This document shows positions 1,926-15,809 of a stretch of 64,000 nucleotides of DNA, piece by piece (position 1 is the first letter of the stretch; each line of letters begins with the position of its first letter). The notes beneath the pieces were generated by a model. It had not been told where the DNA came from. It searched no databases and saw only the letters and a list, made by a program, of their open reading frames with translations. The stretch covers positions 4,402,001 to 4,466,000 of the forward strand of contig NC_135254.1 of assembly GCF_964204865.1 (NCBI RefSeq). The letters are read 5' to 3'. The position numbers and the translations under genes are program-made. The stretch is from Styela clava. Its lineage: Eukaryota.

Positions 1926-3626
1926 CTATTTACCTATACCTACTTCAACTATATTTGGGAGCCCAAATGTGACAGTGCAATTCTGAAACGATATGCGCTT
2001 GTATGTCTTGCAGAAAGTGCTACTTGCAAGCACAATATTTACGAGACGAAGTTCATTTTACATACATTTATGCTGGAAATAATTTTTCATTGATCTAAAT
2101 GCTTTTTCTTGTTCCAATCTTTCAGGTGACGGAAAATGACAAGGAGGTAAACCAATACTAATAATGGGTTGAAATACCCCTTCTTATCATATCAGTCCCT
2201 CTTAAGGGTGAGAGGTAAATTACCATCACACCTCTGACTACAAGAGTTCATGGATTCAAATCCTGATCCACAGTGCTGCCTATTACTTCACCTTTGTAGA
2301 TTTGTTCACAAACTGCAACCATCGAGTCAATGCATGTGAAAAAGGTAATGGTGAACTACAGCAGTGCAAGATATGGTTGGGACTGTTAACCATATGGGAA
2401 GCTGATGTTTGAAAGATTTTATACCTCTTTTGAAGATAAATATAAAAATTCCCTTTTATCTACCTTATTTGTTTCGGCATCCCCATTAAAAAGCCCAAAA
2501 TCAACAGACCATGAAGCATATTAGCATAGCATTTTTAATTTAATTTTCACCTGCTATTAATAATTGCACATGCATATTTTTGTATTATCAGAATATGAAA
2601 TAGAATTGATTTGTTCTTTCACTGCACAAAAGCAATTGCATTAACATAATTAAAACCATAGAAATATATACTCAGTAACAATATTTATTAATAATCGACT
2701 ATATATGATACACTGTGGGTATAATTAATAGAATAAATGTAATGAGGCAAATTGGTGATAGCTGTATTATATTTAGTGCAATTTATGCAGAAATGGGATA
2801 GTTTGAAATGAAAAAAGGAATATGCTACAACTAAGTTTGTCTTTATTAAAAAATCTCGTAGATTTGCTCATTTCCACACGGGAGAAGACAGTATTTGAAT
2901 ATGCATAGTGAATATTGGGTGAAATTTCAGTCCATTATGAAAATGCAGTTACAGGTTTTCATATATTTTTTACACTTACAGAAATCATTGATATAACGAA
3001 AAAGAATTTTCGTAACAGGGTTTGATTTGTCAGCCTTATATTGGCGATGCCGACAAAGGTTGCGAGTGTTAATAAAATGGTTGACATATATCAAGAAATG
3101 ACTTCATAACGAAATGGAAATTGTGACAAGACTTTATGGACACCAACCCTGGCTCACAGAAATCACAATACATGCAAAAGTCTGATTCAAGTTATAATCA
3201 CAAAGTCTTAAAAGGCACTTGATCAAAAGTAAAATATACATAGGCACTACTCAACAAATATCAAAGGGCTGTCAACCAATGTAGAGTAAAGAGTTTACTC
3301 TGGGGAAGAAATTATTATTCCTAAATATTGAAGTTTAGCTCGGACTTTATAAATTAATATATTAAACAGTTAAACCATATATGAAACAGCACAAGAGTTA
3401 ATTTTATTAGTTAAAAAAAACAGTGAAATTCTAAATTTCATTTAACCACCACTTTGAAAAATCTTTTAATCATCTCAGATTCAAGCGGCTGCTATACAAA
3501 AAACAATTAAAGGCAAATACGCAAACAATAATTTTCACCATAAATTTCAAGCACCAAAATTGGGTATATTTGGAACTAACAGGTCCCCAGTTAAAATGAT
3601 ATACCCTGTTATAACATTACACCTTT

Positions 3627-3837
3627 CTAATTACAAGGCAATTTATATTCAATATAATCGGCATAATTTTCATTCAAATATGTTACCACAGCATTTTTTA
3701 GCTGCATCAAATCATTTTCACTATTATATATATTGATTGTGGGACGGATTCTAAATTGGTCGTTATAAACTGAAATTGTAACTTGGGTTTTGTGAAATTT
3801 GAAGATGTCTTTAGTCATCACGTCTGCTTCAGTGAGC
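3627..3837 (-). CDS. Alternative terminal exon C of the PLP enzyme
   Basis: T-rich TAG acceptor, phase 2, open frame LTEADVMTKDIFKFHKTQVTISVYNDQFRIRPTINIYNSENDLMQLKNAVVTYLNENYADYIEYKLPCN*; homologous to exons A and B; AATAAA about 220 nt downstream. Spliced product 407 aa. Confidence 0.75.
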
Positions 3838-3918
3838 CTAAAAAATAAAAATAATATTATTAGTTTAAATTTATTTAATAAAAAAATTTTCATGTTGAAG
3901 AACTGGGATGATTTAAAT

Positions 3919-4203
3919 CAGTTGTTCTCAAACGATGGGCCACAATTTTTTGAGGGGACGTAAGTTAATTGGAAATATAAATAGGTTAGATTTGATCTTG
4001 CTCGCCTTATTTTGGATATTTAGATTCTTTTATTTTGGTTATTTGTGTTTCATCCATATTTTCAACGTGTTTTTGAATAAAACATACTATCGCCTTACTA
4101 TCTGATATTTGAAGCTTATCGTTAGCTAGTATTTTTCAGGTGGGGCGCAAGACTTGACAAATTCTAAAAAAGGAGCGCGGCTTAAAAAGTTCGAGAACCA
4201 CTG
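3919..4203. mobile_element. hAT-type MITE
   Basis: TIRs CAGTTGTTCTCAAAC / GTTCGAGAACCACTG; perfect 8-bp TSD ATTTAAAT. Related copies at 12011-12329 and ~9904-10170. Confidence 0.85.
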
Positions 4204-6036
4204 ATTTAAATTGAGACCTTATTGATAGCAGAAAGATCAACTACCCCAGGTTTTAGCCCCGTGTAACCCATAGTGGGAGAAATAAGGTGAGCTTTGATAT
4301 GATAAATGGAAAGATTCAGCTTCAGAAGGTTGCTTATCTAAATCCTTGTTTAGAGCAAAGAAGCAAATGTATTTATTGTCTAGTTTTCTAGGTTCAATTT
4401 GGACTCTATAATTCGAAGATAAAGATTGATGAGGGTTCCTCTAATTGATGCTTTTAAAACTATACCGAATGACAAAGCAGATTTGAATGGCATGACTTCA
4501 TAACAGATGAATTTTAGACATTTTTTAGGCTTTTTCGTAAGATTCTTATTAGATGGTTGGTCCAACATCTATTAAAAACAGGTTATTCAGAGATGAGAAA
4601 AGAGAATAAAAGAAACCCTTTACAATTAAAAAACAATGATTCATGCATATTAAAGGTGAGGGCCAGGATTATTAATTACGAAAGTGAAAATTAATTTCAC
4701 ATTATGAAGTTCTAAAATCCATGCAGTATCCATTTTCCAGGAATAATATAAAATATGTTGTAGTATTCAACCTTTCAAATCACTGTTATAAAATAGGTAC
4801 CTAATAGTCAAAAATTTTGAATTTCAGAATTTCACTATAGAGTTTATTTAAAAATGAGATTTTTTCAAAATAAATTTCAAGGTATTTTCGAAATGTTCTA
4901 TCCTTAGTATGCAACAAAAAATGAAATTGCCATTTATCTTGATTTTTTTTGAGTTATGGCTCATTTTTGAACTTCAAAGAAGAATTTGTTATTAAAATAA
5001 TGCTTGTTATTATTACTGCATTAAGATATATACGTTGAATAAGATACATGAGCAGGACACCATAATCAATAGACTATGAAGCCTAATTCATAAATTATTA
5101 TGATACATGCAATGCAAGACAGTATACGAAATTACTTGAACATTTTGACAAATCATATCACAGACAGTGAGTGGGAAGGCGTCATGCTCATAGCAGGTCT
5201 TGGCAAAAACATGTAGCAAGAAAACAAGGCTTCCTATAAGTGTGCATGAAGTAGGTTGAGGCATAATTTTTTCAAACTTATTTGAAAAATATGTGGCCAA
5301 ACAATGACCCTCAGGAAAAATTTGAAAAAATAGAAGTAATGACATTTATGAGGCACTTTTTAACTTTACCTACTGATAGAAAGTTTGCGATTGATGCAGT
5401 ACTTTAAACAAATTGATCTATAAGTCGACTTTGTGTTAAACAAGAACTGAGCAGAGGTGTATGTTTAAGATTCTTTTCTGTGCAGTTTGTTTCTTAAAAT
5501 CCTTATTAATACCTTCCATCCAAAGTGATTGATATGGCTGGCAAAACACTTTTTTTTCATATTCAAAAATTGCCTCCAGACAAGCAGCCACCAAAATACA
5601 AAAAAGTGAAATTCTTCTAGAATAGAAGTTCTCAACTAGTCTCTTCTAGCTCACGTTTTAGCAAATTTTAAAATTAAAATTTACCCACCTATCTTTGTAT
5701 ACTGTCTATTTCATGACCGATGTCATAACGAATCCAAAATTTCAGACCATACCATTCTCACAAGATGGCAATTTAACAAAGCGAATAATTTGAACCAGGG
5801 ATGGCCAATACCTAATAATTCACTATTTTGAGTATGAAATATCGGATATATTCAAAAATAAATCAATAGTTTTTCTTAGTGTATGAAGGAATTTGTATAC
5901 AACGAAAAATGGAATTAACATGACGTACAGCTTTGACCAAGCATACCCAAATAGAAAATTTTCCTTGGTGGCTTTGGTAACTGCATATAGAATGGTTTTT
6001 ATTCAGCGTGAGAAATTGAATGCATGGAAAGGATTC

Positions 6037-6350
6037 TGGGAAATTTCGGCGTAGGAAATCTCGCCGCATAGGAAAATCCGCCGCAAGAGCATTTTGCTGT
6101 AAAACGAGTATTCGTGACAAAAACAATTAAGTTTTATTAAAAAAAGATTCGTTAGTCAGGAGCATACTCTAACCCTATAAACATAACTGTTTTTATCACA
6201 AATACTTGTTTTACAGCAAAATGCTTTTGCGGCAATTTTTCATGCAACAAATTTTCCTATGTGGCGACATTTCTTGCGACGAGATTTCCTATGGCGAAAT
6301 TTCTTGCGGCGAGATTTCCTACGACGAAATTTCCTGCTGTGAATTTTCCA
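6037..6350. repeat. Foldback element with ~15-bp subterminal repeats
   Basis: Arrays of GGAAATYTCGCCGYA on the left and their reverse complement on the right. Confidence 0.6.
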
Positions 6351-6525
6351 AACACACATGAAAAAAAAGCACTTTGAATCATTGAATGGTCAATGAATAT
6401 TTTCCGGGCATGGGAATCTGAATTAGTAGCATGTTTGAATACACCACATACGTTTTTTAATTTCAGTTGAGAAACAAGTCACCATGCACCACCATAGAAT
6501 TGAAAAATACTGAATTTACTTTATT

Positions 6526-6718
6526 CTACAGCTTTAAATGTTTCAGGTCTTCGTTAACAAATTTAACAACGCTTTCTTTGATAGCGACATAGTCTGCTTT
6601 GGAATTGTACACATTAAAGGACAAACGTAGAAATGTTGTTTCATTGCAATAATTGAAACATGCCTGCATCCCATATTTTGTATAAAAATCTTTCGTCAAA
6701 TCCCAAATTTCTTCAAGT
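6526..6718 (-). CDS. Alternative terminal exon B of the PLP enzyme
   Basis: TTTCAG acceptor, phase 2, open frame LEEIWDLTKDFYTKYGMQACFNYCNETTFLRLSFNVYNSKADYVAIKESVVKFVNEDLKHLKL*, AATAAA immediately after the stop; homologous to exon A. Spliced product 401 aa. Confidence 0.75.
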
Positions 6719-6949
6719 CTGAAACATGATTAATGTATGCTCCAATGATGGCTGTGGAATCACAAATGGGCTATTTTACTGTGAATATTATAGTATGTTC
6801 AGCTATGAGCCTTTATCTAATAGTGAAAAAGCACTATTTGAATTGCATTGTGGTGATTCACAATTCCTAACACATGCCACATCAGACAATAATTATCCGA
6901 CAATAATTCAGTTGCGAAATTATCCATTCCCCAACAAACCAACCCAAAT

Positions 6950-9900
6950 TTAATCCTGAGTTTTCATTTTCGATAAAACTTCAAGTAACGTATCTTTGAC
7001 TCTAACATAGTCAGTCTCTGTGTTGTAAATATTTGCAGAAACACGAATTGACTGAAATCCGTTAAAACTTGCCAGCATGATCACAATTCCGTTTTCTTTG
7101 TACAGTTTAACAAGCAACTGTGCAACTGCTTTGCGAGCGCTTATTGCATCTGTTGGAATGCTGAATTATGTAAAAGTTTTCAAATGTAAAAATTTTTTAA
7201 ATCCAAGTGCACTGGCTTGGTATTTGAAGCAGTAGACTTGGTTATTTTGGTATCGCCCATGACCACCATCTCACCCGAGTGTAATAATTGCAATAAGTGC
7301 AATTTATTTAAAATAAAGTACCTTCTTACACAGCAGTGGATATTCGTACAGTGATACCTCGGTAGTCGACTCGATACTAAACAATTCTGTAGTCGAACAA
7401 TTCTAGTAAAATATACTGGGTGGGCAAGATCCAATCTTCCAAATATTTTGATTTTTAATTAGCTTCACGTTCCCTCAGAAAACTGTCAACATCCCACCGT
7501 TTGACAACTATCTATATTCAACGCAACCACATTGGTACAAAAAAACAATGTACAATACATACTTTGCAGGTTTTTTCAAAGGCAATCTGATAGTTGTCAT
7601 GCAAGGAGCTCTCATGGAATCCGGAATGTCTAACTCTTCTGTGCCGAGGGCTTCACAGAGAATTTTAGCAGCAAATTTGGTGAGTTCTCTGCCATGAGCT
7701 TGAATGGCTTCCTGGAAAACAAGGATAAAATTTAAGAAGCATTAAAGATTGTGGTAGTCTAGTTTTTCCTGAGTTCCCTTTCCTTGTTGAACTGTGTGCT
7801 CACTATTTTTTCTTGCCATTTGTGTATAATAGATTTTCAGTGGCTTGGAAAAAATAAACTGCTGCTGGGCAGTGCAATGTTTCTCAAGCAGACAAAGAGA
7901 ATTAAAGAATTATATTGTTTTAGAGGTGGAAATTTTACTTCGTCCTATTTGCTAATATTTAGAATCATTGTAATACTTTTTTATACAAGTCACACATATC
8001 ACTAGAAATTTTGCATGAAAGATTGAACGAAGAAGTTTTTATGGTTCGTGGAGGATGAAGAGATCTAAAAAAGACAAAAGAAGGCGTGTATTGTGAAAGG
8101 CTTGGAACCCCTGAGTTAGCTTGTTGGGAAATGGGACTTAGTATGCTGGTGTCACAGGCAGGCAAAAAAATGCATAATTATAATATTAACTACAGTGGAA
8201 TTCAAAAAGTAGAGTCCTGGATGTAATTATACAGTAATCCTAGTTCAAAAATCGGGTCTAGTATAGTTTAGTACCACAAGTACTTCCGGTGGGCGTAGCA
8301 TACAATTTTGCATATGCTATTCCTAACCCCACCTGACTATGCCATCCAAAAATTACGTCACTACGACGTCACCATCACGTGATATGGCTTGCCGAGGTAT
8401 AATTACAATCGCCCAAAATGGCATCTGCGCTGCCGATAACGAACTCTCTAACGCCGATGATCTCTCTCCTATGGTGATCGTTGTGACAAAAAAACGAGAG
8501 AACTAGATTGCTCGATTTTGGGTGATCGTCTGCGCGTTTTGGACGACCATCCACATACTTTGCTGGGTCTTATTACGCACCTGTGACGTCCAAATGACGT
8601 AATTTTTCGGTGACGTAGTCAGGTGGGGTTAGGTTTGACATATGCAAAAATTGTTGAGCCAGGCCAACTAGATGTGGTACTAAACTATACCAGACCCACC
8701 CAGGGATTAATAAATTGAGTAGTCAATGCCGAACCAGAAATACTTTGGCCCTCCCAAAATATAACCTCACCAAACACCTACTAGTGTCTGTATAAATGTT
8801 TTATAAAAAAGAAACAATATTACAAAGAATAGTAGCTTTTGCAGGGCCTTCGAAGCAAAGAAGTAAATAGGTATATATAAAAACTAGCGCACTTCTGAGC
8901 TGAATATGCAATTTTGATTTAAGATAAAAGTTCTCACCAAGCCACCAATCTCTTTATAAAACTTAAGAGCGTGGGGAATACAGAAGTAACTTGAAATATC
9001 CCGGGTTCCAAGATTGTTAAACTGGTCGTCCAATGAGTGTTTGTATCCATGTGACGTCACTAGAGGGCGTAGCTGGCCGTGGAAGTCATCAGAAAACCAA
9101 ATAAATCCACATGAACGAGGCACGTAACACCATTTATGAAAGTTTGCTAAAAAAGATAAAAATATTTTTGAGCAATCAATTAATTAGCCTTTATCCTCAC
9201 ATATAAGCAGAGTTCAAAACTCAAAACTAAAGTTGCAAAACTAAGGGGTCGGCTTATATGCGCATAACTCTAACTGCATTGAAGAGTTTCAAAGTAAGAT
9301 GAATTTGAAGGATGAATGATTTAGAGAGGCTTCTTACCATTATTAATAAAAGTAAAACATTACAATAATTGTTATCATTTTTATTAATTCTCTTCTGCAA
9401 CCGGCAACTGTACAGCATGTTACAATTTGTAGGGTCGGCTGATATGCAAATTTTCATAAATTCATCCTTTCAGGAACGTTTTTATACAAGGATATACGGT
9501 TGTTTTTCGATCTCATAACTACTGGGAAAACGAATTTTCATGACAAAACCAGACCATTATAGCACATATAACTTGAAATAATGTTTCGATTATCGGAGTT
9601 CCTACAAACATCTTTTCAATTCAAAATTTCATTTGATCTAAATCTTTCGATGTCAGAATCCTAACGAATGACAAAATATTGAAATATTATTTCAAGCAAA
9701 CGATTAACTACCTGAATAAAAGTCGGCTCCAACTTCGGCAACATTGAGTTTTATTTGACCAGGTGCATGAGCGCCATCTATCAATGTTAGGACGCCTCGT
9801 TCACGACATAACTTGGTCAGTTTTTCAACAGGAAATATTATAGCTGACGGACTTGTTATGTGGTCTGAAATATTAAAATAGATAAATGGTATATACAATA

Positions 9901-12900
9901 TACCAGGGCCTTTTTTGGAATTTGTCAAGTTTCACGTCTCACCTCAAAAATAACTAGCTAAGAATAAGCTACCAATAACAGATAGAAAGGCGAGAGTAAT
10001 CTAGCAGATAATAAGAAAAATAAAAGGCACAACAGCTCTCTGAAATTTCTAAACAATAAAGAAATGTAAATATTCAAAATAAGCCCGGCAAGATCAAATC
10101 TGACAAATATTTTTATTTTGCTTCACGACCCCTCAAAAAATTGTCTACGCTCTACGGTTTAAGAGCAACTGGTATATACAAACATACAGTAAATTCGGGC
10201 TGATAAGTTCTGGTATTTCAATGTTTCAAATTAACACTTTACATGCAGGTAAATTTTGAAAAATCTATCATACATTTTATGTACTCGATCCATTCAAATA
10301 AATGTAGTCATGACAACAAACCAACGCACCTCCGATGCCCACTGATGGCTTGTTGGAAAGTACACATTAAGCACTCAAAAGTGCAAGTCAAATAAGACTT
10401 GAATAAGTAAGTAGTGGTTGGGAAAATGATATAGGCCTTTTTTGTGATAATATCGACAATGAACATGCCGTAAACTCACCCAGAACTGCAAGTTTGATCT
10501 TAGGATTTTCATCCAATGCTTTGCGGAAAACATCTACCAAATCATCCTCAGATTTTATGGGAAGTGGGATTTCAGCAGTGACAACTTTAACACCTGTTTG
10601 GAAAGAAATTTAAGGATTCGAGATAAGCATACGAGCTATAACATTAAATTGAAAAGTCGATGAAAAGTCCCGACATAGGCAACAAAATTGTGTGCAAGAT
10701 AAACAATATTCGTGCCACTTTGGTATGTGGTTTCAACGTTATAAAACCACTTTGGTTCGTAATCCCACTTGCTTAACATGATCGAAATTGGGCGCCCCCG
10801 AAGTATGTGCACCAAGATGGCGCACAACCTGAACCCTAACCTGGTACACATACTATGTTCAGGTTGTGCACCATCTTGATGCACATTTTTCTGGAGTTCC
10901 CAAAATTGCATAAAAACATCCTCATGGATTTCAGTTCCTATCACAGAGATCACATAACTGCTAAGACCGTATACCAAAGTCCCGATATTCTAATAAACAC
11001 TAATAATCAGATTCTTTGACTGTGGTATTCAAATATACAGGGTGTCCATAAAGTCCCTTTTACAAGTCTCAATTTTGTTATCAAGTAACAAAAGTTATGA
11101 AGTTCTCAATATATCTTAACCAGGTTTGTTGTTTTTTATTCAGTAATTGTTCAAGTATTTTTACTTCATTTAATACAACTGTGAGGGCCAAAACGATATA
11201 GCATCAGTAAATTCCCTTTGCAATTTTATAATTTGTGGACACCCTATTATTTTACAGTTCGATTTCGACATTCTTGTCACACATAGTGCGCAATAACAGT
11301 ACTTCTTCTTACCTTTGATAAAGTCCTCTTGTTCGTCAGCGATATTCTTAACTGCATTGTAAGTGTGAGTATGGATCAATATCTGATCTCCTGGCTCAAA
11401 TTTCAAGCATTTCACCACAGTGTTGATGCCTGAGAAATAATAATAAATTAAAATAGTTTTCTAACACTCAGCTAAGGGTAAGACAGTTGGTGCAAATTTT
11501 GCTCTGAACCTACTAAATTTAATTCTAATCTCAACAATGTCGTTGAGTTATTCTTAGCTGAAACATCAAAATTTGGTTAAGATAGGATTTACATATTTAT
11601 CCCGGGGGAGAGGAAAGTTGGTAAGACGGCTTAACCATATGGCGAACCACGGCCTCTCGTCCGGTTATCTGTCCATGTCGGGTATGGGATTAGTTAGTTA
11701 TTTTTGTTTTCGGAAGCATGGACTTGATGGTGGAGTAAGCCGTTTAAGTTGCGATAAAATCGGCCTAATATTTGACATTTGCAAACTTCAAACCTGTAGT
11801 CACATTGTCAACAAGCACCAAGTTCGATTTATTAACTCCAAGAAATTCCGCAGCAGCTGTGAGAGAAGCATCGTAGTATTTTTCCAGGTTGAATCGGAAC
11901 CAGAGGTCGGGCTGCGCTTCTTGCTCATATATGAACCTGAAATAAGTTGATAGTGTCATAGGATGGTCCAAAAAAAACAGAACCCAAGTCATCTGGAAAA
12001 TATTCTAGAGCAGGGGTTCTCAAATGATGAGGCGCGCCCCACAAGGGGGCCATGGATAATATTTTGAGGGAGCGCTAATTAAAAATTAAAATATTTGTTC
12101 GATTCGATATTGCCCCCTTTAATTTGGATATTTACATTCTTTTACTCTTTGGTTAGAGATTGTGATTCCATCCACGTATTTTCAACATGTTTTTCGAATA
12201 AAACATACTTTCGCCTTACTATCTGTTATATGTAGCTTATTGTCAGCTAGTTATTTTCGAGGTGGGGCACAAGACTTGACAAGTCATTAAAAGGGGGCGA
12301 GGATTAAAAAATTAAAAAGAGAACAACTGTTCTAGAGAGAACATAAATTTCAAACAGTCCTAGATTACTAAAACTTTTGGATACAATCATACACAAACAG
12401 AAATCAAATGTTAAATAAATATCCTTCAAAATTTATAAGTTCTCTTTTTTGAGTCACCCTGTCAGAGAGAATTGTACTTATACAATGGTTTACTTAAATT
12501 ATTTGCTTGGTGCAGGGGTGGGCAATTACTTTTCTGAGTGAGTCTGCTACAGATAACAGACTTGGTTACTGGGCCAGAGGCCTATTATGAAAAACTATGA
12601 ATAAAAACAGTTTACTTACAACTACTTGTCTGTCAGCTAGGCTACTGTTTGTATAATAATATTAAGCAGAATGTAACTATCAGCGTCATTATGATGTTAT
12701 TTTCATCTAGATTTTTAACAGAATTTATATCCATAAAACTATAGTTATAATTTCAGCAGCCCACACTGGACCTGGATGAAACATTTCGGTGGGCCAGATC
12801 TGGCCTGCAGGCGTAATTTGCCCACCCCTGGCTTGGGGGATAGGAGCTCACAGGGTTAAGATGATTTATCAGGAGCTCACAGGGTTAAGATGATTTATCA

Positions 12901-13919
12901 GGTTCGGATGCCATGGTGGTAAACTACAGATTACTGTTATGCTAGTTAGTGGTTCAAAATACCAGGCAATTGAAATGATAAACTACTTGTTACCTATCTC
13001 CTAATACCTGTCCTGGCATCTTAATTAATAATACTCTGCACAATTAGGCTTTATGGCAGGGGTGGGCAAAATTTTTTAGTATAAGAGCCGCATGTAGCAA
13101 GTCAGAAATATGTGAGAGCCGCATAATTTTTGAAATTAATAATATTAGAACGTAAGATTAGTCGTTTGACCGATTTAAATTAAATTCCACGCTACGATTT
13201 TCATACTAAAACAGAATTTGTCTTAATCATAGTAGAAAACTTCGTTCAACCGCATAATGATTTAAAAACTGTTGCGCTACAGTTTCTCATAGTTAAATTT
13301 GGATAATATATTACTATTGCTAGCGAGAAGAGCCGCATAAAAACCCTGGCGAGTCACATGCGGCTCGTGAGCCGCTGTTTGCCCGTTGCTTTATGGGCTT
13401 ATCTCTCCCCCCAGTAAAAATATGAAAATCCTGTACATTATTAATATACATTTAACTGAGTTACAATTGAGTGGCAAGGCTTTTCATATAGATTTAAAAT
13501 TCTATTCTACAAGGATATCAATAAATAATATTACATAAAATTACTGTCTTTGAGTATGCAAAATTATTTCAGTCAATATCATGTATTTCAGCATAAATGA
13601 GAGTTTTGATAATATCATAGTTTAATCATATATTACGGCACCGTTGCTTGATAACCAATATTACTAATTTTGTGTTGACCGTCATCCTGAAATGCCTTTT
13701 TTACATTGTGTATGCACAGTGTATTTTTAGCATTATGAAAAAGTGAACACTAATAACTGATAAATCCCAATATTCAAAAATGAGAACTTACTTGACTTTC
13801 TGTTCCACCACTCTCTTAGGAGTTGGCCCATAAGATCCATGGTTCACAAAAGCACATGATTTATCCAAGAGAAACTCATCCTTCATTTCATCTCCAAACT
13901 TTACGTCTTTCAAATCCAT
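6950..13919 (-). CDS. PLP-dependent aminotransferase class V / C-S lyase (Egt2 hercynylcysteine sulfoxide lyase / CefD / L-cysteine desulfhydrase-like), isoform with terminal exon A, 407 aa
   Basis: Exons 13919-13792, 11936-11794, 11429-11313, 10593-10480, 9864-9712, 9146-8938, 7711-7563, 7160-6950; all GT-AG and frame-consistent. Motifs FVNHGSYG, NVTTG, DHITS, LIDGAH, ANFHKW (PLP Schiff-base Lys), GTRD, IRVSANIYN. Confidence 0.9.
8254..8697. mobile_element. Foldback MITE with long TIRs
   Basis: GGGTCTAGTATAGTTTAGTACCACA / TGTGGTACTAAACTATACCAGACCC plus inner inverted repeats (CCTAACCCCACCTGACTA / TAGTCAGGTGGGGTTAGG). Confidence 0.75.
10790..10901. repeat. Short palindromic repeat family (CCAAGATGGCG / AACCCTAACCTGGTACAC core)
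   Basis: ~110-bp hairpin element. Related copies at ~19350, 21980-22180, 40338, 42700-42895, 43460-43670, 45377-45482, 45720-45860, 48836-49065 and 59352-59461. Confidence 0.7.
11038..11247. mobile_element. Tc1/mariner-type MITE
   Basis: TA-CAGGGTGTCCA ... TGGACACCCT-A; second copy at ~41455-41657. Confidence 0.7.
11579..11740 (-). mobile_element. 5'-truncated SINE copy
   Basis: AGGATTTACATATTTATCCCGGGGGAGAGGAAAG... is the reverse complement of the SINE 3' end. Confidence 0.8.
12011..12329. mobile_element. hAT-type MITE (same family as 3919-4203)
   Basis: CAGGGGTTCTC / GAGAACAACTG termini; perfect 8-bp TSD TTCTAGAG. Confidence 0.85.
12513..12830. mobile_element. hAT/Charlie-type MITE
   Basis: TIR CAGGGGTGGGCAA / TTGCCCACCCCTG; TSD GCTTGGTG / GCTTGGGG. 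Confidence 0.8.
12842..12899. repeat. Perfect 29-bp tandem duplication
   Basis: AGGAGCTCACAGGGTTAAGATGATTTATC twice. Confidence 0.9.
13057..13388. mobile_element. hAT/Charlie-type MITE
   Basis: CAGGGGTGGGCAAA left end, partly deleted right end, TSD CTTTATGG on both sides. Confidence 0.75.
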
Positions 13920-15140: not shown

Positions 15141-15809
15141 TTATTGCAGAATATTTCTACTCTCAAAGACTTTATCCCGTTGGCTTTTTAGTTGTCGCTT
15201 CCACTCTACTTGTGCGTTTGTTAGTCGATTCATCATCATAGAACTTGTAGAACTATGCTGCCTCCGATGGCTGCGAAAGCGCATATTTTCGGCAGTTTCA
15301 GATGAAGTCGAGGGTCGATCTTCACTGACTAAATTCTGAGTTTCAACTCCTTGTTCTCGATTCCGCTTTTTACCGATAAAATCAACTAATCCAACAATTG
15401 CCAAATATGAGAATAATATTCCAATTAAAATCAGATACATCAGGACAACAACCTCCATAGTCTTAGTGCTTCGTACTTCATATTTACACTGACACAAGAG
15501 GCAGTATTGTTCCAGCATTACGCCAGATATATTTGCCCAATTCAATTCCGGAACGACAACATCTAAACAGTTACATTTTTCTTGAACTGCATCTTTTGTA
15601 TAAACCTTTCTCGGAATATTGAGAGCAATAAGTTGTTTGCAAGTGCAGCGACACCGAATGTCATTGAATTTTGCTTCTGCCGATATCTCACATAAAAGGT
15701 TACAAATAGTGAGTAAAAATAAAGTTAGTAACGACCCCTTAATAGTAGGCAACATGATTATTTGTCCGTTTAATACTATATCTAAAATATTCTGAGAAGA
15801 TGAAAACAT
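15141..15809 (-). CDS. TMEM9: Transmembrane protein 9 family (TMEM9/TMEM9B)
   Basis: Single-exon ORF: signal peptide, FNDIRCRCTC, CNCLDVV, YCLLCQCKYEVRS, one TM helix, C-terminal QVEWKRQLKSQRDKVFESRNIL. Start at ATG 15809 or ATG 15755. Confidence 0.88.
   Translation of the reverse strand: MFSSSQNILDIVLNGQIIMLPTIKGSLLTLFLLTICNLLCEISAEAKFNDIRCRCTCKQLIALNIPRKVYTKDAVQEKCNCLDVVVPELNWANISGVMLEQYCLLCQCKYEVRSTKTMEVVVLMYLILIGILFSYLAIVGLVDFIGKKRNREQGVETQNLVSEDRPSTSSETAENMRFRSHRRQHSSTSSMMMNRLTNAQVEWKRQLKSQRDKVFESRNILQ

What the first reader, a model, noticed from the sequence alone, without database searches (positions are those of the whole stretch)
3627..7711. One PLP enzyme gene with three interchangeable C-terminal domains encoded by tandem alternative last exons
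Seen: exon 7 ends in phase 2 (AA|GT at 7563). Three downstream exons (7160-6950, 6718-6526, 3837-3627) each have a good acceptor, phase 2, an open frame and their own stop, giving 407, 401 and 407 aa. They are highly divergent but keep the motif IRVSANIYN / LRLSFNVYN / IRPTINIYN followed by D(Y/L)xxxK. No copies of exons 1-7 lie between them. Known: in class-V PLP enzymes the Arg of this RxSxxxYN strand binds the substrate carboxylate, and the small domain shapes the active site. Inference: splicing selects substrate specificity or localisation from a shared PLP-binding core. Open frames despite deep divergence imply selection on all three.
Basis: partly seen in the sequence, partly recalled or inferred. 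Interest (0 to 1): 0.8.

Follow-up and report, generated by a model that had tools for sequence, protein, structure and literature searches.

The report
Three swappable tail exons, one lyase
A sea-squirt gene for a vitamin-B6-dependent sulfur-cleaving enzyme carries three old tandem copies of its last coding exon and splices any one of them on, giving three enzyme versions that gene-prediction databases already list but nobody has studied.

Summary
On the minus strand, exon 7 (7711-7563) ends in phase 2. Three homologous exons, A (7160), B (6718) and C (3837), each finish the frame with their own stop, giving 407, 401 and 407 aa.

The gene is Styela clava LOC120332696, a class-V PLP enzyme. 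Its closest solved relative is the fungal ergothioneine C-S lyase Egt2.

RNA-type contigs show these joints:
- exon 7 to C in 4 of 4 runs;
- exon 7 to A, and exon 7 to B, in 1 of 4 runs;
- A to C, from a GT donor 6 nt after A's stop.

So A is a stop-carrying cassette exon, not a last exon. C is the default terminal exon.

All three tails match a profile of the family's tail (53, 53 and 34 bits) and keep the one invariant tail residue, an arginine. C is the most derived tail and carries most of the amino-acid polymorphism.

All three isoforms already exist as NCBI predicted proteins. No other species showed alternative tails. A switch of substrate or localisation remains untested.

This is a new member of a known kind, C-terminal substitution derived from tandem exon duplication. 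The scan has noted duplicated last exons in two other genes of this genome (NOS, ABCG).

The parts
13792..13919 (-). Exon 1 with the start ATG (13919-13917); ends in phase 2
   Evidence: Read; tblastn of P0151 residues 1-43 maps to 13919-13791 at 100%
11794..11936 (-). Exon 2
   Evidence: Read; tblastn
11313..11429 (-). Exon 3
   Evidence: Read; tblastn
10480..10593 (-). Exon 4
   Evidence: Read; tblastn
9712..9864 (-). Exon 5 (core of the Aminotran_5 match)
   Evidence: Pfam PF00266, E 6.5e-08
8938..9146 (-). Exon 6 with the PLP lysine (NFHKW; K223 invariant in 65 sequences)
   Evidence: the spliced joint 8937/7710 is seen in 4 of 4 runs
7563..7711 (-). Exon 7, the last shared exon; it ends AA|GTATGT in phase 2
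6944..7160 (-). Tail exon A, 217 nt. It is a cassette exon with stop TAA at 6952-6950 and a used donor GT at 6943-6942. It is the family-typical (ancestral-type) tail and gives the 407-aa isoform (P0152).
   Evidence: Joints 7563>7160 (two alleles) and 6944>3837 in run X9; one contig spans exactly 6943-7160. Family profile score 53.4 bits. It is the best match of the other species' tail (P0153: 41 bits).
6526..6718 (-). Tail exon B, coding part, with stop TAG at 6528-6526. AATAAA follows directly at 6525-6520, then GTAAAT. It gives the 401-aa isoform (P0273).
   Evidence: Joint 7566>6718 in run X9 only. Family profile score 53.5 bits. The NCBI model XP_039255943.2 is identical to the window's reading. 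Poly(A) hexamers.
3351..3837 (-). Tail exon C, the default terminal exon. Coding 3837-3627, with stop TAG at 3629-3627. The 3' UTR is covered by contigs down to about 3351, with ATTAAA at 3470 and AATAAA at 3408. It gives the 407-aa isoform (P0151).
   Evidence: Joint 7563>3837 in 4 of 4 runs. One 1438-nt contig of X5 runs C-e7-e6 and onward. Also.

Best explanation
This is the single Egt2-like class-V PLP C-S lyase gene of the sea squirt Styela clava. Its last coding exon was duplicated twice in tandem long ago; the copies are now only 20-30% identical in protein.

Each copy encodes the same structural module, the final helix, beta-hairpin and helix of the small domain. That module carries the one invariant tail residue, an arginine. 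In related enzymes this arginine is held to bind the substrate's carboxylate.

Each copy has an acceptor in the same phase and its own stop codon. So whichever copy is spliced onto exon 7 sets the C-terminus, and anything downstream becomes 3' UTR.
- C has the longest pyrimidine tract and its own poly(A) signals. It is the default, with A and B skipped.
- A is a cassette exon. Its stop sits 6 nt before its donor, and it is spliced on to C.
- B is used at least occasionally. It is probably a terminal exon with its own AATAAA.

Shown: the exons, their homology, the junctions and the existence of three protein models.

Inferred: the three enzymes share the PLP core but differ around the substrate pocket or dimer surface, so they differ in substrate preference or kinetics. 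Also inferred: the enzyme is the C-S lyase that acts after the sulfoxide synthase OvoA, which this genome also encodes.

My confidence is about 0.85 in the splicing architecture and about 0.3 in tuning of the substrate pocket. The figure given is for the whole statement.
For: Frames, stops and splice sites.

Homology of the three tails to each other and to the family:
- 7 invariant columns among the three tails;
- family profile scores of 53.4 (A), 53.5 (B) and 34.0 (C) bits;
- only these 3 of 1616 ORF pieces hit;
- searches of the whole genome.

Splicing (4 runs from 3 studies, Logan contigs):
- e6>e7 in 4 of 4 runs;
- e7>C in 4 of 4;
- e7>A in 1 of 4 (two alleles);
- e7>B in 1 of 4;
- A>C in 1 of 4.
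All of these have GT..AG ends.

There is no poly(A) hexamer between A's stop and B, whereas B and C each have them.

Database models for all three tails:
- P0151 = XP_039255935.2 (tail C);
- P0273 = XP_039255943.2 (tail B);
- P0152 = XP_039256074.1 (tail A).

Family:
- PF00266;
- Egt2 is the best solved relative, E 3.4e-42;
- Foldseek TM-score 0.87 to Egt2 and 0.84 to LolT;
- K223 and the tail arginine (R377 in the A isoform, R369 in the C isoform) are invariant in 65 sequences.

Both folded isoforms give the same helix-strand-strand-helix tail at high confidence, with mean pLDDT 95.7 and 93.8.

Arginine role: passages of PMC3343029 say that Arg379 of CsdB probably recognises the substrate carboxylate and is conserved among cysteine desulfurases.

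OvoA: seven collinear exon matches to TIGR04344 on C13, covering profile positions 36-443 of 444.
Against: - A and B junctions were seen in only one run (X9). Each rests on contigs with 27-29 letters on the shorter side, and the B junction rests on a single contig.
- The runs are only guessed to be RNA. Low-depth contigs also cover the introns, so unspliced RNA or DNA is present.
- Contigs cannot give isoform proportions, tissue or stage.
- The most used tail, C, is the least family-like. It replaces the nearly invariant Ser after the arginine (RPT instead of RxS). It also carries 5 non-synonymous against 1 synonymous difference between haplotypes, which fits relaxed constraint as well as adaptation.
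- One allele of B has lost its stop (P0275, 422 aa).
- No alternative tails were found in the nearest other species (P0153 cluster, 3 members) or in Ciona (3 members).
- A word-based search with tail C found only S. clava's own proteins (2 hits from 5 candidates).
- No enzyme activity, substrate or localisation was tested.
- I did not verify structurally that the tail arginine equals CsdB Arg379.
Confidence: 0.65

Rival explanations
1. Only one isoform matters. C, the default, is the working enzyme. A and B are leftover duplicated exons picked up by occasional noisy splicing and by automatic gene models.
For: e7>C is the only tail junction found in 3 of the 4 runs. A and B junctions come from one run at low contig depth. 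One B allele has lost its stop. No other species shows alternative tails.
Against: - The duplication is old, with 20-21% identity of A to B and C. Yet A and B still score 53 bits against a family profile built without them, the same as the true orthologue's tail (54.6).
- They show 1 of 69 and 0 of 63 amino-acid differences between alleles whose C tails differ at 4 of 69.
- A, not C, is the tail closest to the nearest other species.
- The A>C joint uses a proper GT donor 6 nt after the stop.
Confidence: 0.15
2. The isoforms are real, but A is the catalytically canonical enzyme. C is a fast-evolving tail under relaxed or altered constraint, whose role is not a new substrate. It could instead change stability, dimer partner or activity level, or make a weakly active form that tunes enzyme output through splicing.
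For: - C scores 34.0 bits against 53.4-53.5 for A and B.
- C has Pro-Thr where the family has x-Ser after the invariant arginine.
- Between haplotypes, C shows 5 non-synonymous to 1 synonymous difference, against 1 to 4 in exon 7 (Fisher p 0.08).
- C shows 4 of 69 amino-acid differences against 3 of 338 in the rest (p 0.018).
- With the SufS profile, only the A isoform aligns through the tail.
Against: - C keeps the invariant arginine and the Y-N pair.
- C folds with pLDDT 96-98 in the same topology.
- C is the junction found in every run, which is odd for a mere attenuated form.
- The numbers are small, and the differences come from only two or three haplotypes.
Confidence: 0.2

Closest known systems
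C-terminal substitutions derived from tandem exon duplication (homologous alternative exons, as catalogued for human genes in PMC8373072; I read passages only)
   Same: Adjacent homologous exons of equal phase replace one another, so the isoforms keep the fold but differ in one structural module. That paper states that C-terminal cases arise through alternative poly(A) use or exon skipping, and that just over half of its events lie at transcript ends.
   Different: - There are three copies rather than two.
- They are in a tunicate metabolic enzyme.
- One copy (A) is a cassette exon whose own stop lies 6 nt before its donor, so A and C can sit in one mRNA. This is not strict mutually exclusive splicing.
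- No conservation outside the species has been shown so far, whereas most human cases are ancient.
Egt2, the hercynylcysteine sulfoxide lyase of Neurospora crassa (PDB 5uts, 5v12, 5v1x)
   Same: It is the best solved relative by sequence (E 3.4e-42 over residues 6-333) and by fold (TM-score 0.87, 26-27% identity). It is a class-V PLP enzyme, and NCBI names the gene 'hercynylcysteine sulfoxide lyase-like'.
   Different: - Identity is only about 27%.
- Egt2 is 501 aa, with insertions.
- HMMER did not align the tail region.
- No activity is known for the animal proteins.
- The sulfoxide synthase gene found in this genome matches the ovothiol enzyme (OvoA profile). I did not search for an ergothioneine synthase.
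LolT, a PLP-dependent Mannich cyclase (PDB 8dl5, 9aza, 9azb)
   Same: Equally close in fold (TM-score 0.84, 28-30% identity) and in sequence (E 2e-38 to 4e-40 over residues 7-242).
   Different: LolT has a different chemistry and comes from a fungal alkaloid pathway. This shows that closeness to Egt2 does not fix the reaction.
Bacterial OvoB, the ovothiol sulfoxide lyase
   Same: It is a PLP-dependent C-S lyase acting after OvoA. The S. clava genome encodes an OvoA-like gene.
   Different: PMC8433421 (passages) reports no OvoB-like sequence in metazoans except Hydrozoa. It uses Egt2 sequences as an outgroup to OvoB. I did not compare this protein with an OvoB sequence.

Membership tests
Aminotransferase class V (Pfam PF00266), fold-type I PLP enzymes | Significant match to the family profile | tested here: met
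   Exon 5 alone scores E 6.5e-08, 32.4 bits, against a cut-off of 21.5. PF00266 is precomputed for P0151, P0152 and their relatives.
Aminotransferase class V (Pfam PF00266), fold-type I PLP enzymes | Schiff-base lysine in the H-K motif | tested here: met
   NFHKW in exon 6. K223 is invariant and H222 nearly invariant in 65 aligned sequences. That this lysine binds PLP is inferred from the family.
Aminotransferase class V (Pfam PF00266), fold-type I PLP enzymes | Conserved C-terminal arginine (carboxylate recognition, CsdB Arg379 type) | tested here: inconclusive
   An arginine is invariant in the tail in 65 sequences (R377 and R369) and is present in all three tails. Equivalence to CsdB Arg379 (PMC3343029 passages) is inferred, not superposed.
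Egt2 / EgtE ergothioneine C-S lyases | Sequence or fold membership at equivalog level | tested here: not met
   NCBIfam TIGR04343 (EgtE) scores 51 bits against a cut-off of 400. No NCBIfam model passes its cut-off. Egt2 is only the nearest solved relative, at 26-27% identity.
Egt2 / EgtE ergothioneine C-S lyases | Cleaves hercynylcysteine sulfoxide; partner sulfoxide synthase present | not testable with these tools
   Activity needs an assay. An OvoA-type synthase gene is present. An Egt1/EgtB-type gene was not searched for.
Alternative C-terminal exons derived from tandem exon duplication | Adjacent exons homologous to each other, with the same phase and the same structural element | tested here: met
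Alternative C-terminal exons derived from tandem exon duplication | Each alternative seen joined to the shared upstream exon in RNA | tested here: met
   e7>C in 4 of 4 runs, e7>A in 1 of 4, e7>B in 1 of 4 (a single contig). The evidence is weak for B, though an NCBI model exists.
Alternative C-terminal exons derived from tandem exon duplication | Alternatives conserved in other species | tested here: inconclusive
   Nothing was found in protein databases.
Strict mutually exclusive exons | Never two of the set in one mRNA | tested here: not met
   The joint 6944>3837 puts A and C in one transcript.

The most novel reading that the evidence does not exclude
Marine invertebrates make ovothiol, but their C-S lyase has not been identified. 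PMC8433421 found no OvoB-like sequence in metazoans outside Hydrozoa. This Egt2-like family occurs in molluscs, echinoderms, hemichordates and tunicates, and S. clava also has ovoA. The family could therefore be that missing lyase.

In Styela, one gene would then yield three splice-selected isozymes. Their exchangeable module carries the carboxylate-binding arginine and reshapes the substrate pocket. The dominant C module would be under diversifying rather than relaxed selection. That would be a splice-level route to new substrate specificities for thiohistidine or other sulfoxide conjugates.
Probability: 0.12. Interest if true: 0.65.

Novelty: new member of a known kind. Interest (0 to 1): 0.35.

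Why it matters
If the three tails change what the enzyme accepts or how fast it works, this is a compact natural experiment. It has one PLP core and three interchangeable active-site-adjacent modules, chosen by splicing. That is rare for metabolic enzymes and easy to test by expressing three proteins.

It also flags an uncharacterised animal enzyme family as a candidate for the unassigned lyase step of ovothiol synthesis.

Against that, alternative C-terminal exons derived from exon duplication are a recognised class. The three isoforms are already in NCBI's predicted proteins. Nothing here shows a functional difference.

Tried and rejected
- Alternative tails in other species. I found none.
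  - A full-length search with P0001.
  - A region search with tail C, which gave 2 hits from 5 candidates, both S. clava.
  - A full-length search with the nearest other species' protein P0153, which gave 28 hits and no second isoform.
  - Cluster members of P0153 and of Ciona P0160 all share one tail.
  - Oyster and mussel 'isoforms' (P0162, P0163, P0181, P0165, P0166) differ along their whole length, not in the tail.
- A correction to my own notes. After I noted that no tail-B isoform was listed. That was wrong. It sat inside the 90% cluster of P0152 and appeared.
- A fourth or decayed tail copy, or copies of exons 1-7 downstream. None found.
- Docking/selector RNA pairing. One search found 84 inverted pairs in 4.1 kb. 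The pairs 3881-3904/7175-7198 (75% complementary) and 3988-4006/7419-7437 (84%) bracket A and B. They are short, AT-rich or inside repeats with very high contig depth, so I do not rely on them.
- Targeting signals. I see no clear peroxisomal-type end in ...TQD, ...LKL or ...PCN. This is my reading; no tool was used.
- Pfam on the single tails found nothing significant.
- Literature searches.
  - 'hercynylcysteine sulfoxide lyase' plus 'alternative splicing': 0 papers.
  - 'Styela clava' plus 'alternative splicing': 22 papers, 10 listed, none on this gene by title.
  - 'SufS' plus 'R376A': 0 papers.
  - 'ovothiol' plus 'tunicate': 9 papers. PMC4768315 passages mention no tunicate lyase.
  - PMC11507941 held neither search term.
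Those of PMC8433421 and PMC8373072 might list relevant sequences or events.
- Depths are not used to rank isoforms, as the tool advises.

Full report
WHAT IS THERE.
The region lies in a minus-strand gene of an AT-rich animal genome (GC 0.31-0.39). I read seven shared exons:
- e1 13919-13792
- e2 11936-11794
- e3 11429-11313
- e4 10593-10480
- e5 9864-9712
- e6 9146-8938
- e7 7711-7563

Together they are 1013 nt, which is 337 codons plus 2 nt. Exon 7 ends AA|GTATGT.

Three downstream exons start right after an AG, at 7160 (A), 6718 (B) and 3837 (C). Each completes the split codon and stays open for 69, 63 and 69 further codons up to its own stop.

IS IT MORE THAN CHANCE.
- I built an HMM from the tail region of 134 full-length homologues, leaving out S. 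clava. It scores A at 53.4 bits, B at 53.5 and C at 34.0. The tail of the nearest other species scores 54.6, but that sequence was in the training set.
- The same HMM was scanned over all 1616 six-frame ORF pieces of at least 25 aa in the window. It hits only these three exons (E 1.5e-15, 1.3e-15, 3.5e-09); the next hit is E 0.3.
- In the whole 377-Mb genome, tail A as query finds only itself, B and C. Tail C finds itself, B (E 0.007), A, and two weak hits elsewhere.
- tblastn of the full proteins finds each of exons 1-7 once, with no copy between or after the tails. Exon 6 has only one distant paralogue elsewhere in the genome (32% identity).
- An open frame of 64-70 codons has a probability of about 0.005-0.007 at the local composition.

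WHOSE GENE.
An exon-6 search of 1.84 billion representative proteins returned a 407-aa protein identical over the exon (P0001). A search with that protein names the organism and gene: Styela clava, 'hercynylcysteine sulfoxide lyase-like', LOC120332696.

The database proteins map to the tails as follows:
- P0151 (XP_039255935.2, isoform X1) equals the window's exons 1-7 plus tail C.
- P0273 (XP_039255943.2, isoform X2, 401 aa) equals exons 1-7 plus tail B.
- P0152 (XP_039256074.1, 407 aa) carries tail A.
- P0275 (XP_039256067.1, 422 aa) carries tail B with the stop replaced, reading 21 residues further.

The last two come from a different accession series and differ at a few core residues. I take them for another haplotype copy in an older assembly; that is an inference.

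So all three tails are already present in NCBI predicted proteins. I found no paper on them.

FAMILY.
- Exon 5 matches Aminotran_5.
- The best solved relative of the whole protein is the Neurospora ergothioneine C-S lyase Egt2 (E 3.4e-42, residues 6-333). The Mannich cyclase LolT entries come next, then cysteine desulfurases and C-DES.
- No NCBIfam model reaches its cut-off. EgtE scores 51 bits of the 400 needed.
- The AlphaFold models of the C and A isoforms are confident (mean pLDDT 95.7 and 93.8).
- The C model matches Egt2 at TM-score 0.87 and LolT at 0.84.
- In a 65-sequence alignment, 12 columns are invariant. They include K223 (the HK lysine) and one tail residue only, the arginine (R377 in the A isoform, R369 in the C isoform).
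- Passages of PMC3343029 state that Arg379 of CsdB probably recognises the substrate carboxylate and is conserved among cysteine desulfurases. That the tail arginine here is its equivalent is my inference. The SufS profile aligning through the A tail supports it.
- In both models the swapped part forms the same elements, helix, two strands, helix. In the A isoform these are H343-361, E366-370, E373-379 and H386-405. In the C isoform they are H339-353, E358-362, E365-369 and H378-395. A has an 8-residue longer, less confident linker.

IS IT SPLICED.
The look-up of sequencing runs gave 13 runs of one organism. Nine have small contig sets guessed to be RNA, and four have genome-sized sets. I laid four of the nine (X1, X2, X5, X9, from three studies) on 3300-9200. 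They behave as RNA: the e6>e7 joint (8937/7710, GT..AG) is in 4 of 4 runs.

Tail junctions:
- e7>C (7563>3837) is in 4 of 4 runs. In X5, one 1438-nt contig runs from the C exon through e7 and e6 and onward.
- e7>A (7563>7160) is in X9 only, in two allelic forms. One carries a synonymous change at 7565.
- e7>B (>6718) is in X9 only. It rests on one contig with 27 letters on the shorter side.
- A>C (6944>3837, GT..AG) is in X9, together with a 218-nt contig that spans exactly 6943-7160.

So exon A is an internal exon of 217 nt. Its stop lies 6 nt before its donor, and in those mRNAs exon C is 3' UTR.

This agrees with the poly(A) hexamers. There is no AATAAA or ATTAAA in the 231 nt between A's stop and B's acceptor. 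B has AATAAA directly after its stop (6525) and ATTAAA at 6461. C has ATTAAA at 3470 and AATAAA at 3408, and contigs cover C's 3' UTR down to about 3351.

B also has a GTAAAT 6 nt after its stop, at the same spacing as A's donor. No B>C joint was listed, and the NCBI stop-loss model reads through that GT. I therefore take B as a terminal exon, without proof.

Caveats:
- Contigs keep only the commoner variants, so absence in three runs is not absence.
- Low-depth contigs also cover the introns, as unspliced RNA or DNA.
- Depths cannot rank isoforms.
- Tissues and stages are unknown to me.

SELECTION.
The duplication is old. A is 21% and 20% identical to B and C, and the DNA barely aligns. Even so, A and B remain as family-like as a real orthologue.

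Between the alleles available, the amino-acid differences are:

| Part | Amino-acid differences |
|---|---|
| Tail B | 0 of 63 in three alleles (one allele has lost the stop) |
| Tail A | 1 of 69 |
| Tail C | 4 of 69 |
| Rest of the protein (P0001 vs P0151) | 3 of 338 |

For tail C against the rest, Fisher p is 0.018.

SNPs listed in the RNA contigs are four non-synonymous and one synonymous in C, and one non-synonymous and four synonymous in exon 7. Adding the further change seen in P0001 gives 5:1 against 1:4 (p 0.08). These come from two or three haplotypes only.

C also replaces the nearly invariant Ser after the arginine (RPT). The other species' tail (P0153, 56% identical overall) matches A best (41 bits), then B (32), and does not match C at E<=10.

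The picture:
- A is the ancestral-type tail.
- B is a well-kept copy.
- C is the most derived and least constrained, yet it is the default in the RNA sampled.

'Selection on all three' is therefore only partly borne out.

HOW IT LIKELY WORKS.
The first tail exon joined to exon 7 ends translation. C has the longest pyrimidine tract before its AG, and A and B have shorter ones, which fits default skipping. Regulated inclusion of A, or use of B, then swaps the arginine-bearing module. In the A form the stop is 6 nt from the last exon junction. By the usual 50-nt rule of nonsense-mediated decay that should spare it; this is established for vertebrates and is an inference here.

Whether the tails change substrate choice, kinetics, dimer pairing or stability is open. 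I see no targeting motif at any C-terminus.

CONTEXT.
- The genome encodes an OvoA-type sulfoxide synthase. Seven collinear exon matches to TIGR04344 lie on C13:2422300-2427873, covering profile positions 36-443 of 444. Their bit scores sum to about 423 against a cut-off of 400 for one protein, which is a rough sum.
- PMC8433421 (passages) reports no OvoB-like sequence in metazoans except Hydrozoa.
- The relatives of this gene listed are from bivalves, gastropods, echinoderms, hemichordates, tunicates and an annelid, followed by bacterial 'isopenicillin-N epimerase'-named proteins.

That this family supplies the animal lyase step is a lead, not a result.

COMPARISON AND VERDICT.
PMC8373072 (passages) describes C-terminal substitutions derived from tandem exon duplication as a recognised class, made by alternative poly(A) use or exon skipping. 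This locus is a three-copy example in a tunicate enzyme. It has the twist that one copy is a stop-carrying cassette exon.

The joined spliced sequence was not built or searched by me.

Earlier notes of this scan report duplicated last exons in two other genes of this genome (NOS and ABCG). I did not test them.

Interest is moderate to low: real, tidy and experimentally attractive, but of a known kind and already in annotation.

Noticed in passing
G000:C13:2422300-2427873 (minus strand; loci L011-L014): An OvoA-type 5-histidylcysteine sulfoxide synthase gene. Seven collinear exon matches to TIGR04344 cover profile positions 36-443 of 444. So the sea squirt probably makes ovothiol-type thiohistidines. 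A separate single match lies on C2:23327714-23328379.
   Followed up: partly
window 6526-6528 (stop of tail exon B), compared with protein P0275: One database allele (XP_039256067.1, 422 aa) has a sense codon in place of B's stop and reads 21 residues further, through the GTAAAT that follows. This is a stop-loss polymorphism in an otherwise invariant exon.
   Followed up: partly
window 3619-3621: Contigs of two runs (X2 record 8, X9 record 22) end exactly at 3621. That is 6 nt after C's stop and just before a GTAATG. This is the same stop-plus-6-nt-plus-GT layout as exon A, and it gives the same 217-nt length. Other contigs read straight through. It may be an optional 3'-UTR intron or only a graph break.
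   Followed up: no
window 6039-6334, 3891-4284, 7437-7470 and 8225-8815: Intronic repeats with very high summed contig depth in all four runs.
- A nested inverted repeat of GGAAATTTCGxCG-type units at 6039-6134 / 6179-6334.
- A short inverted pair at 3911-3933 / 4189-4211.
- A palindromic element around 8300-8660.
They are probably small transposable elements present in many transcripts.
   Followed up: no
window 15141-15755 (minus strand): An intronless 204-codon ORF just upstream of the lyase gene. By eye it has a hydrophobic N-terminus, a cysteine-rich stretch and one further hydrophobic segment. It was not searched.
   Followed up: no
G000:C6:18726404-18726562 (L002): This is the only other match to exon 6 in the genome (32% identity, E 2.4e-4). 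It is a distant class-V paralogue, so the Egt2-like gene is single-copy.
   Followed up: no
same genome, other pieces (scan notes s1-822876, s1-826080): Earlier notes report a duplicated alternative last exon in the NOS gene and in an ABCG gene of this genome. Duplicated terminal exons may recur in S. clava.
   Followed up: no
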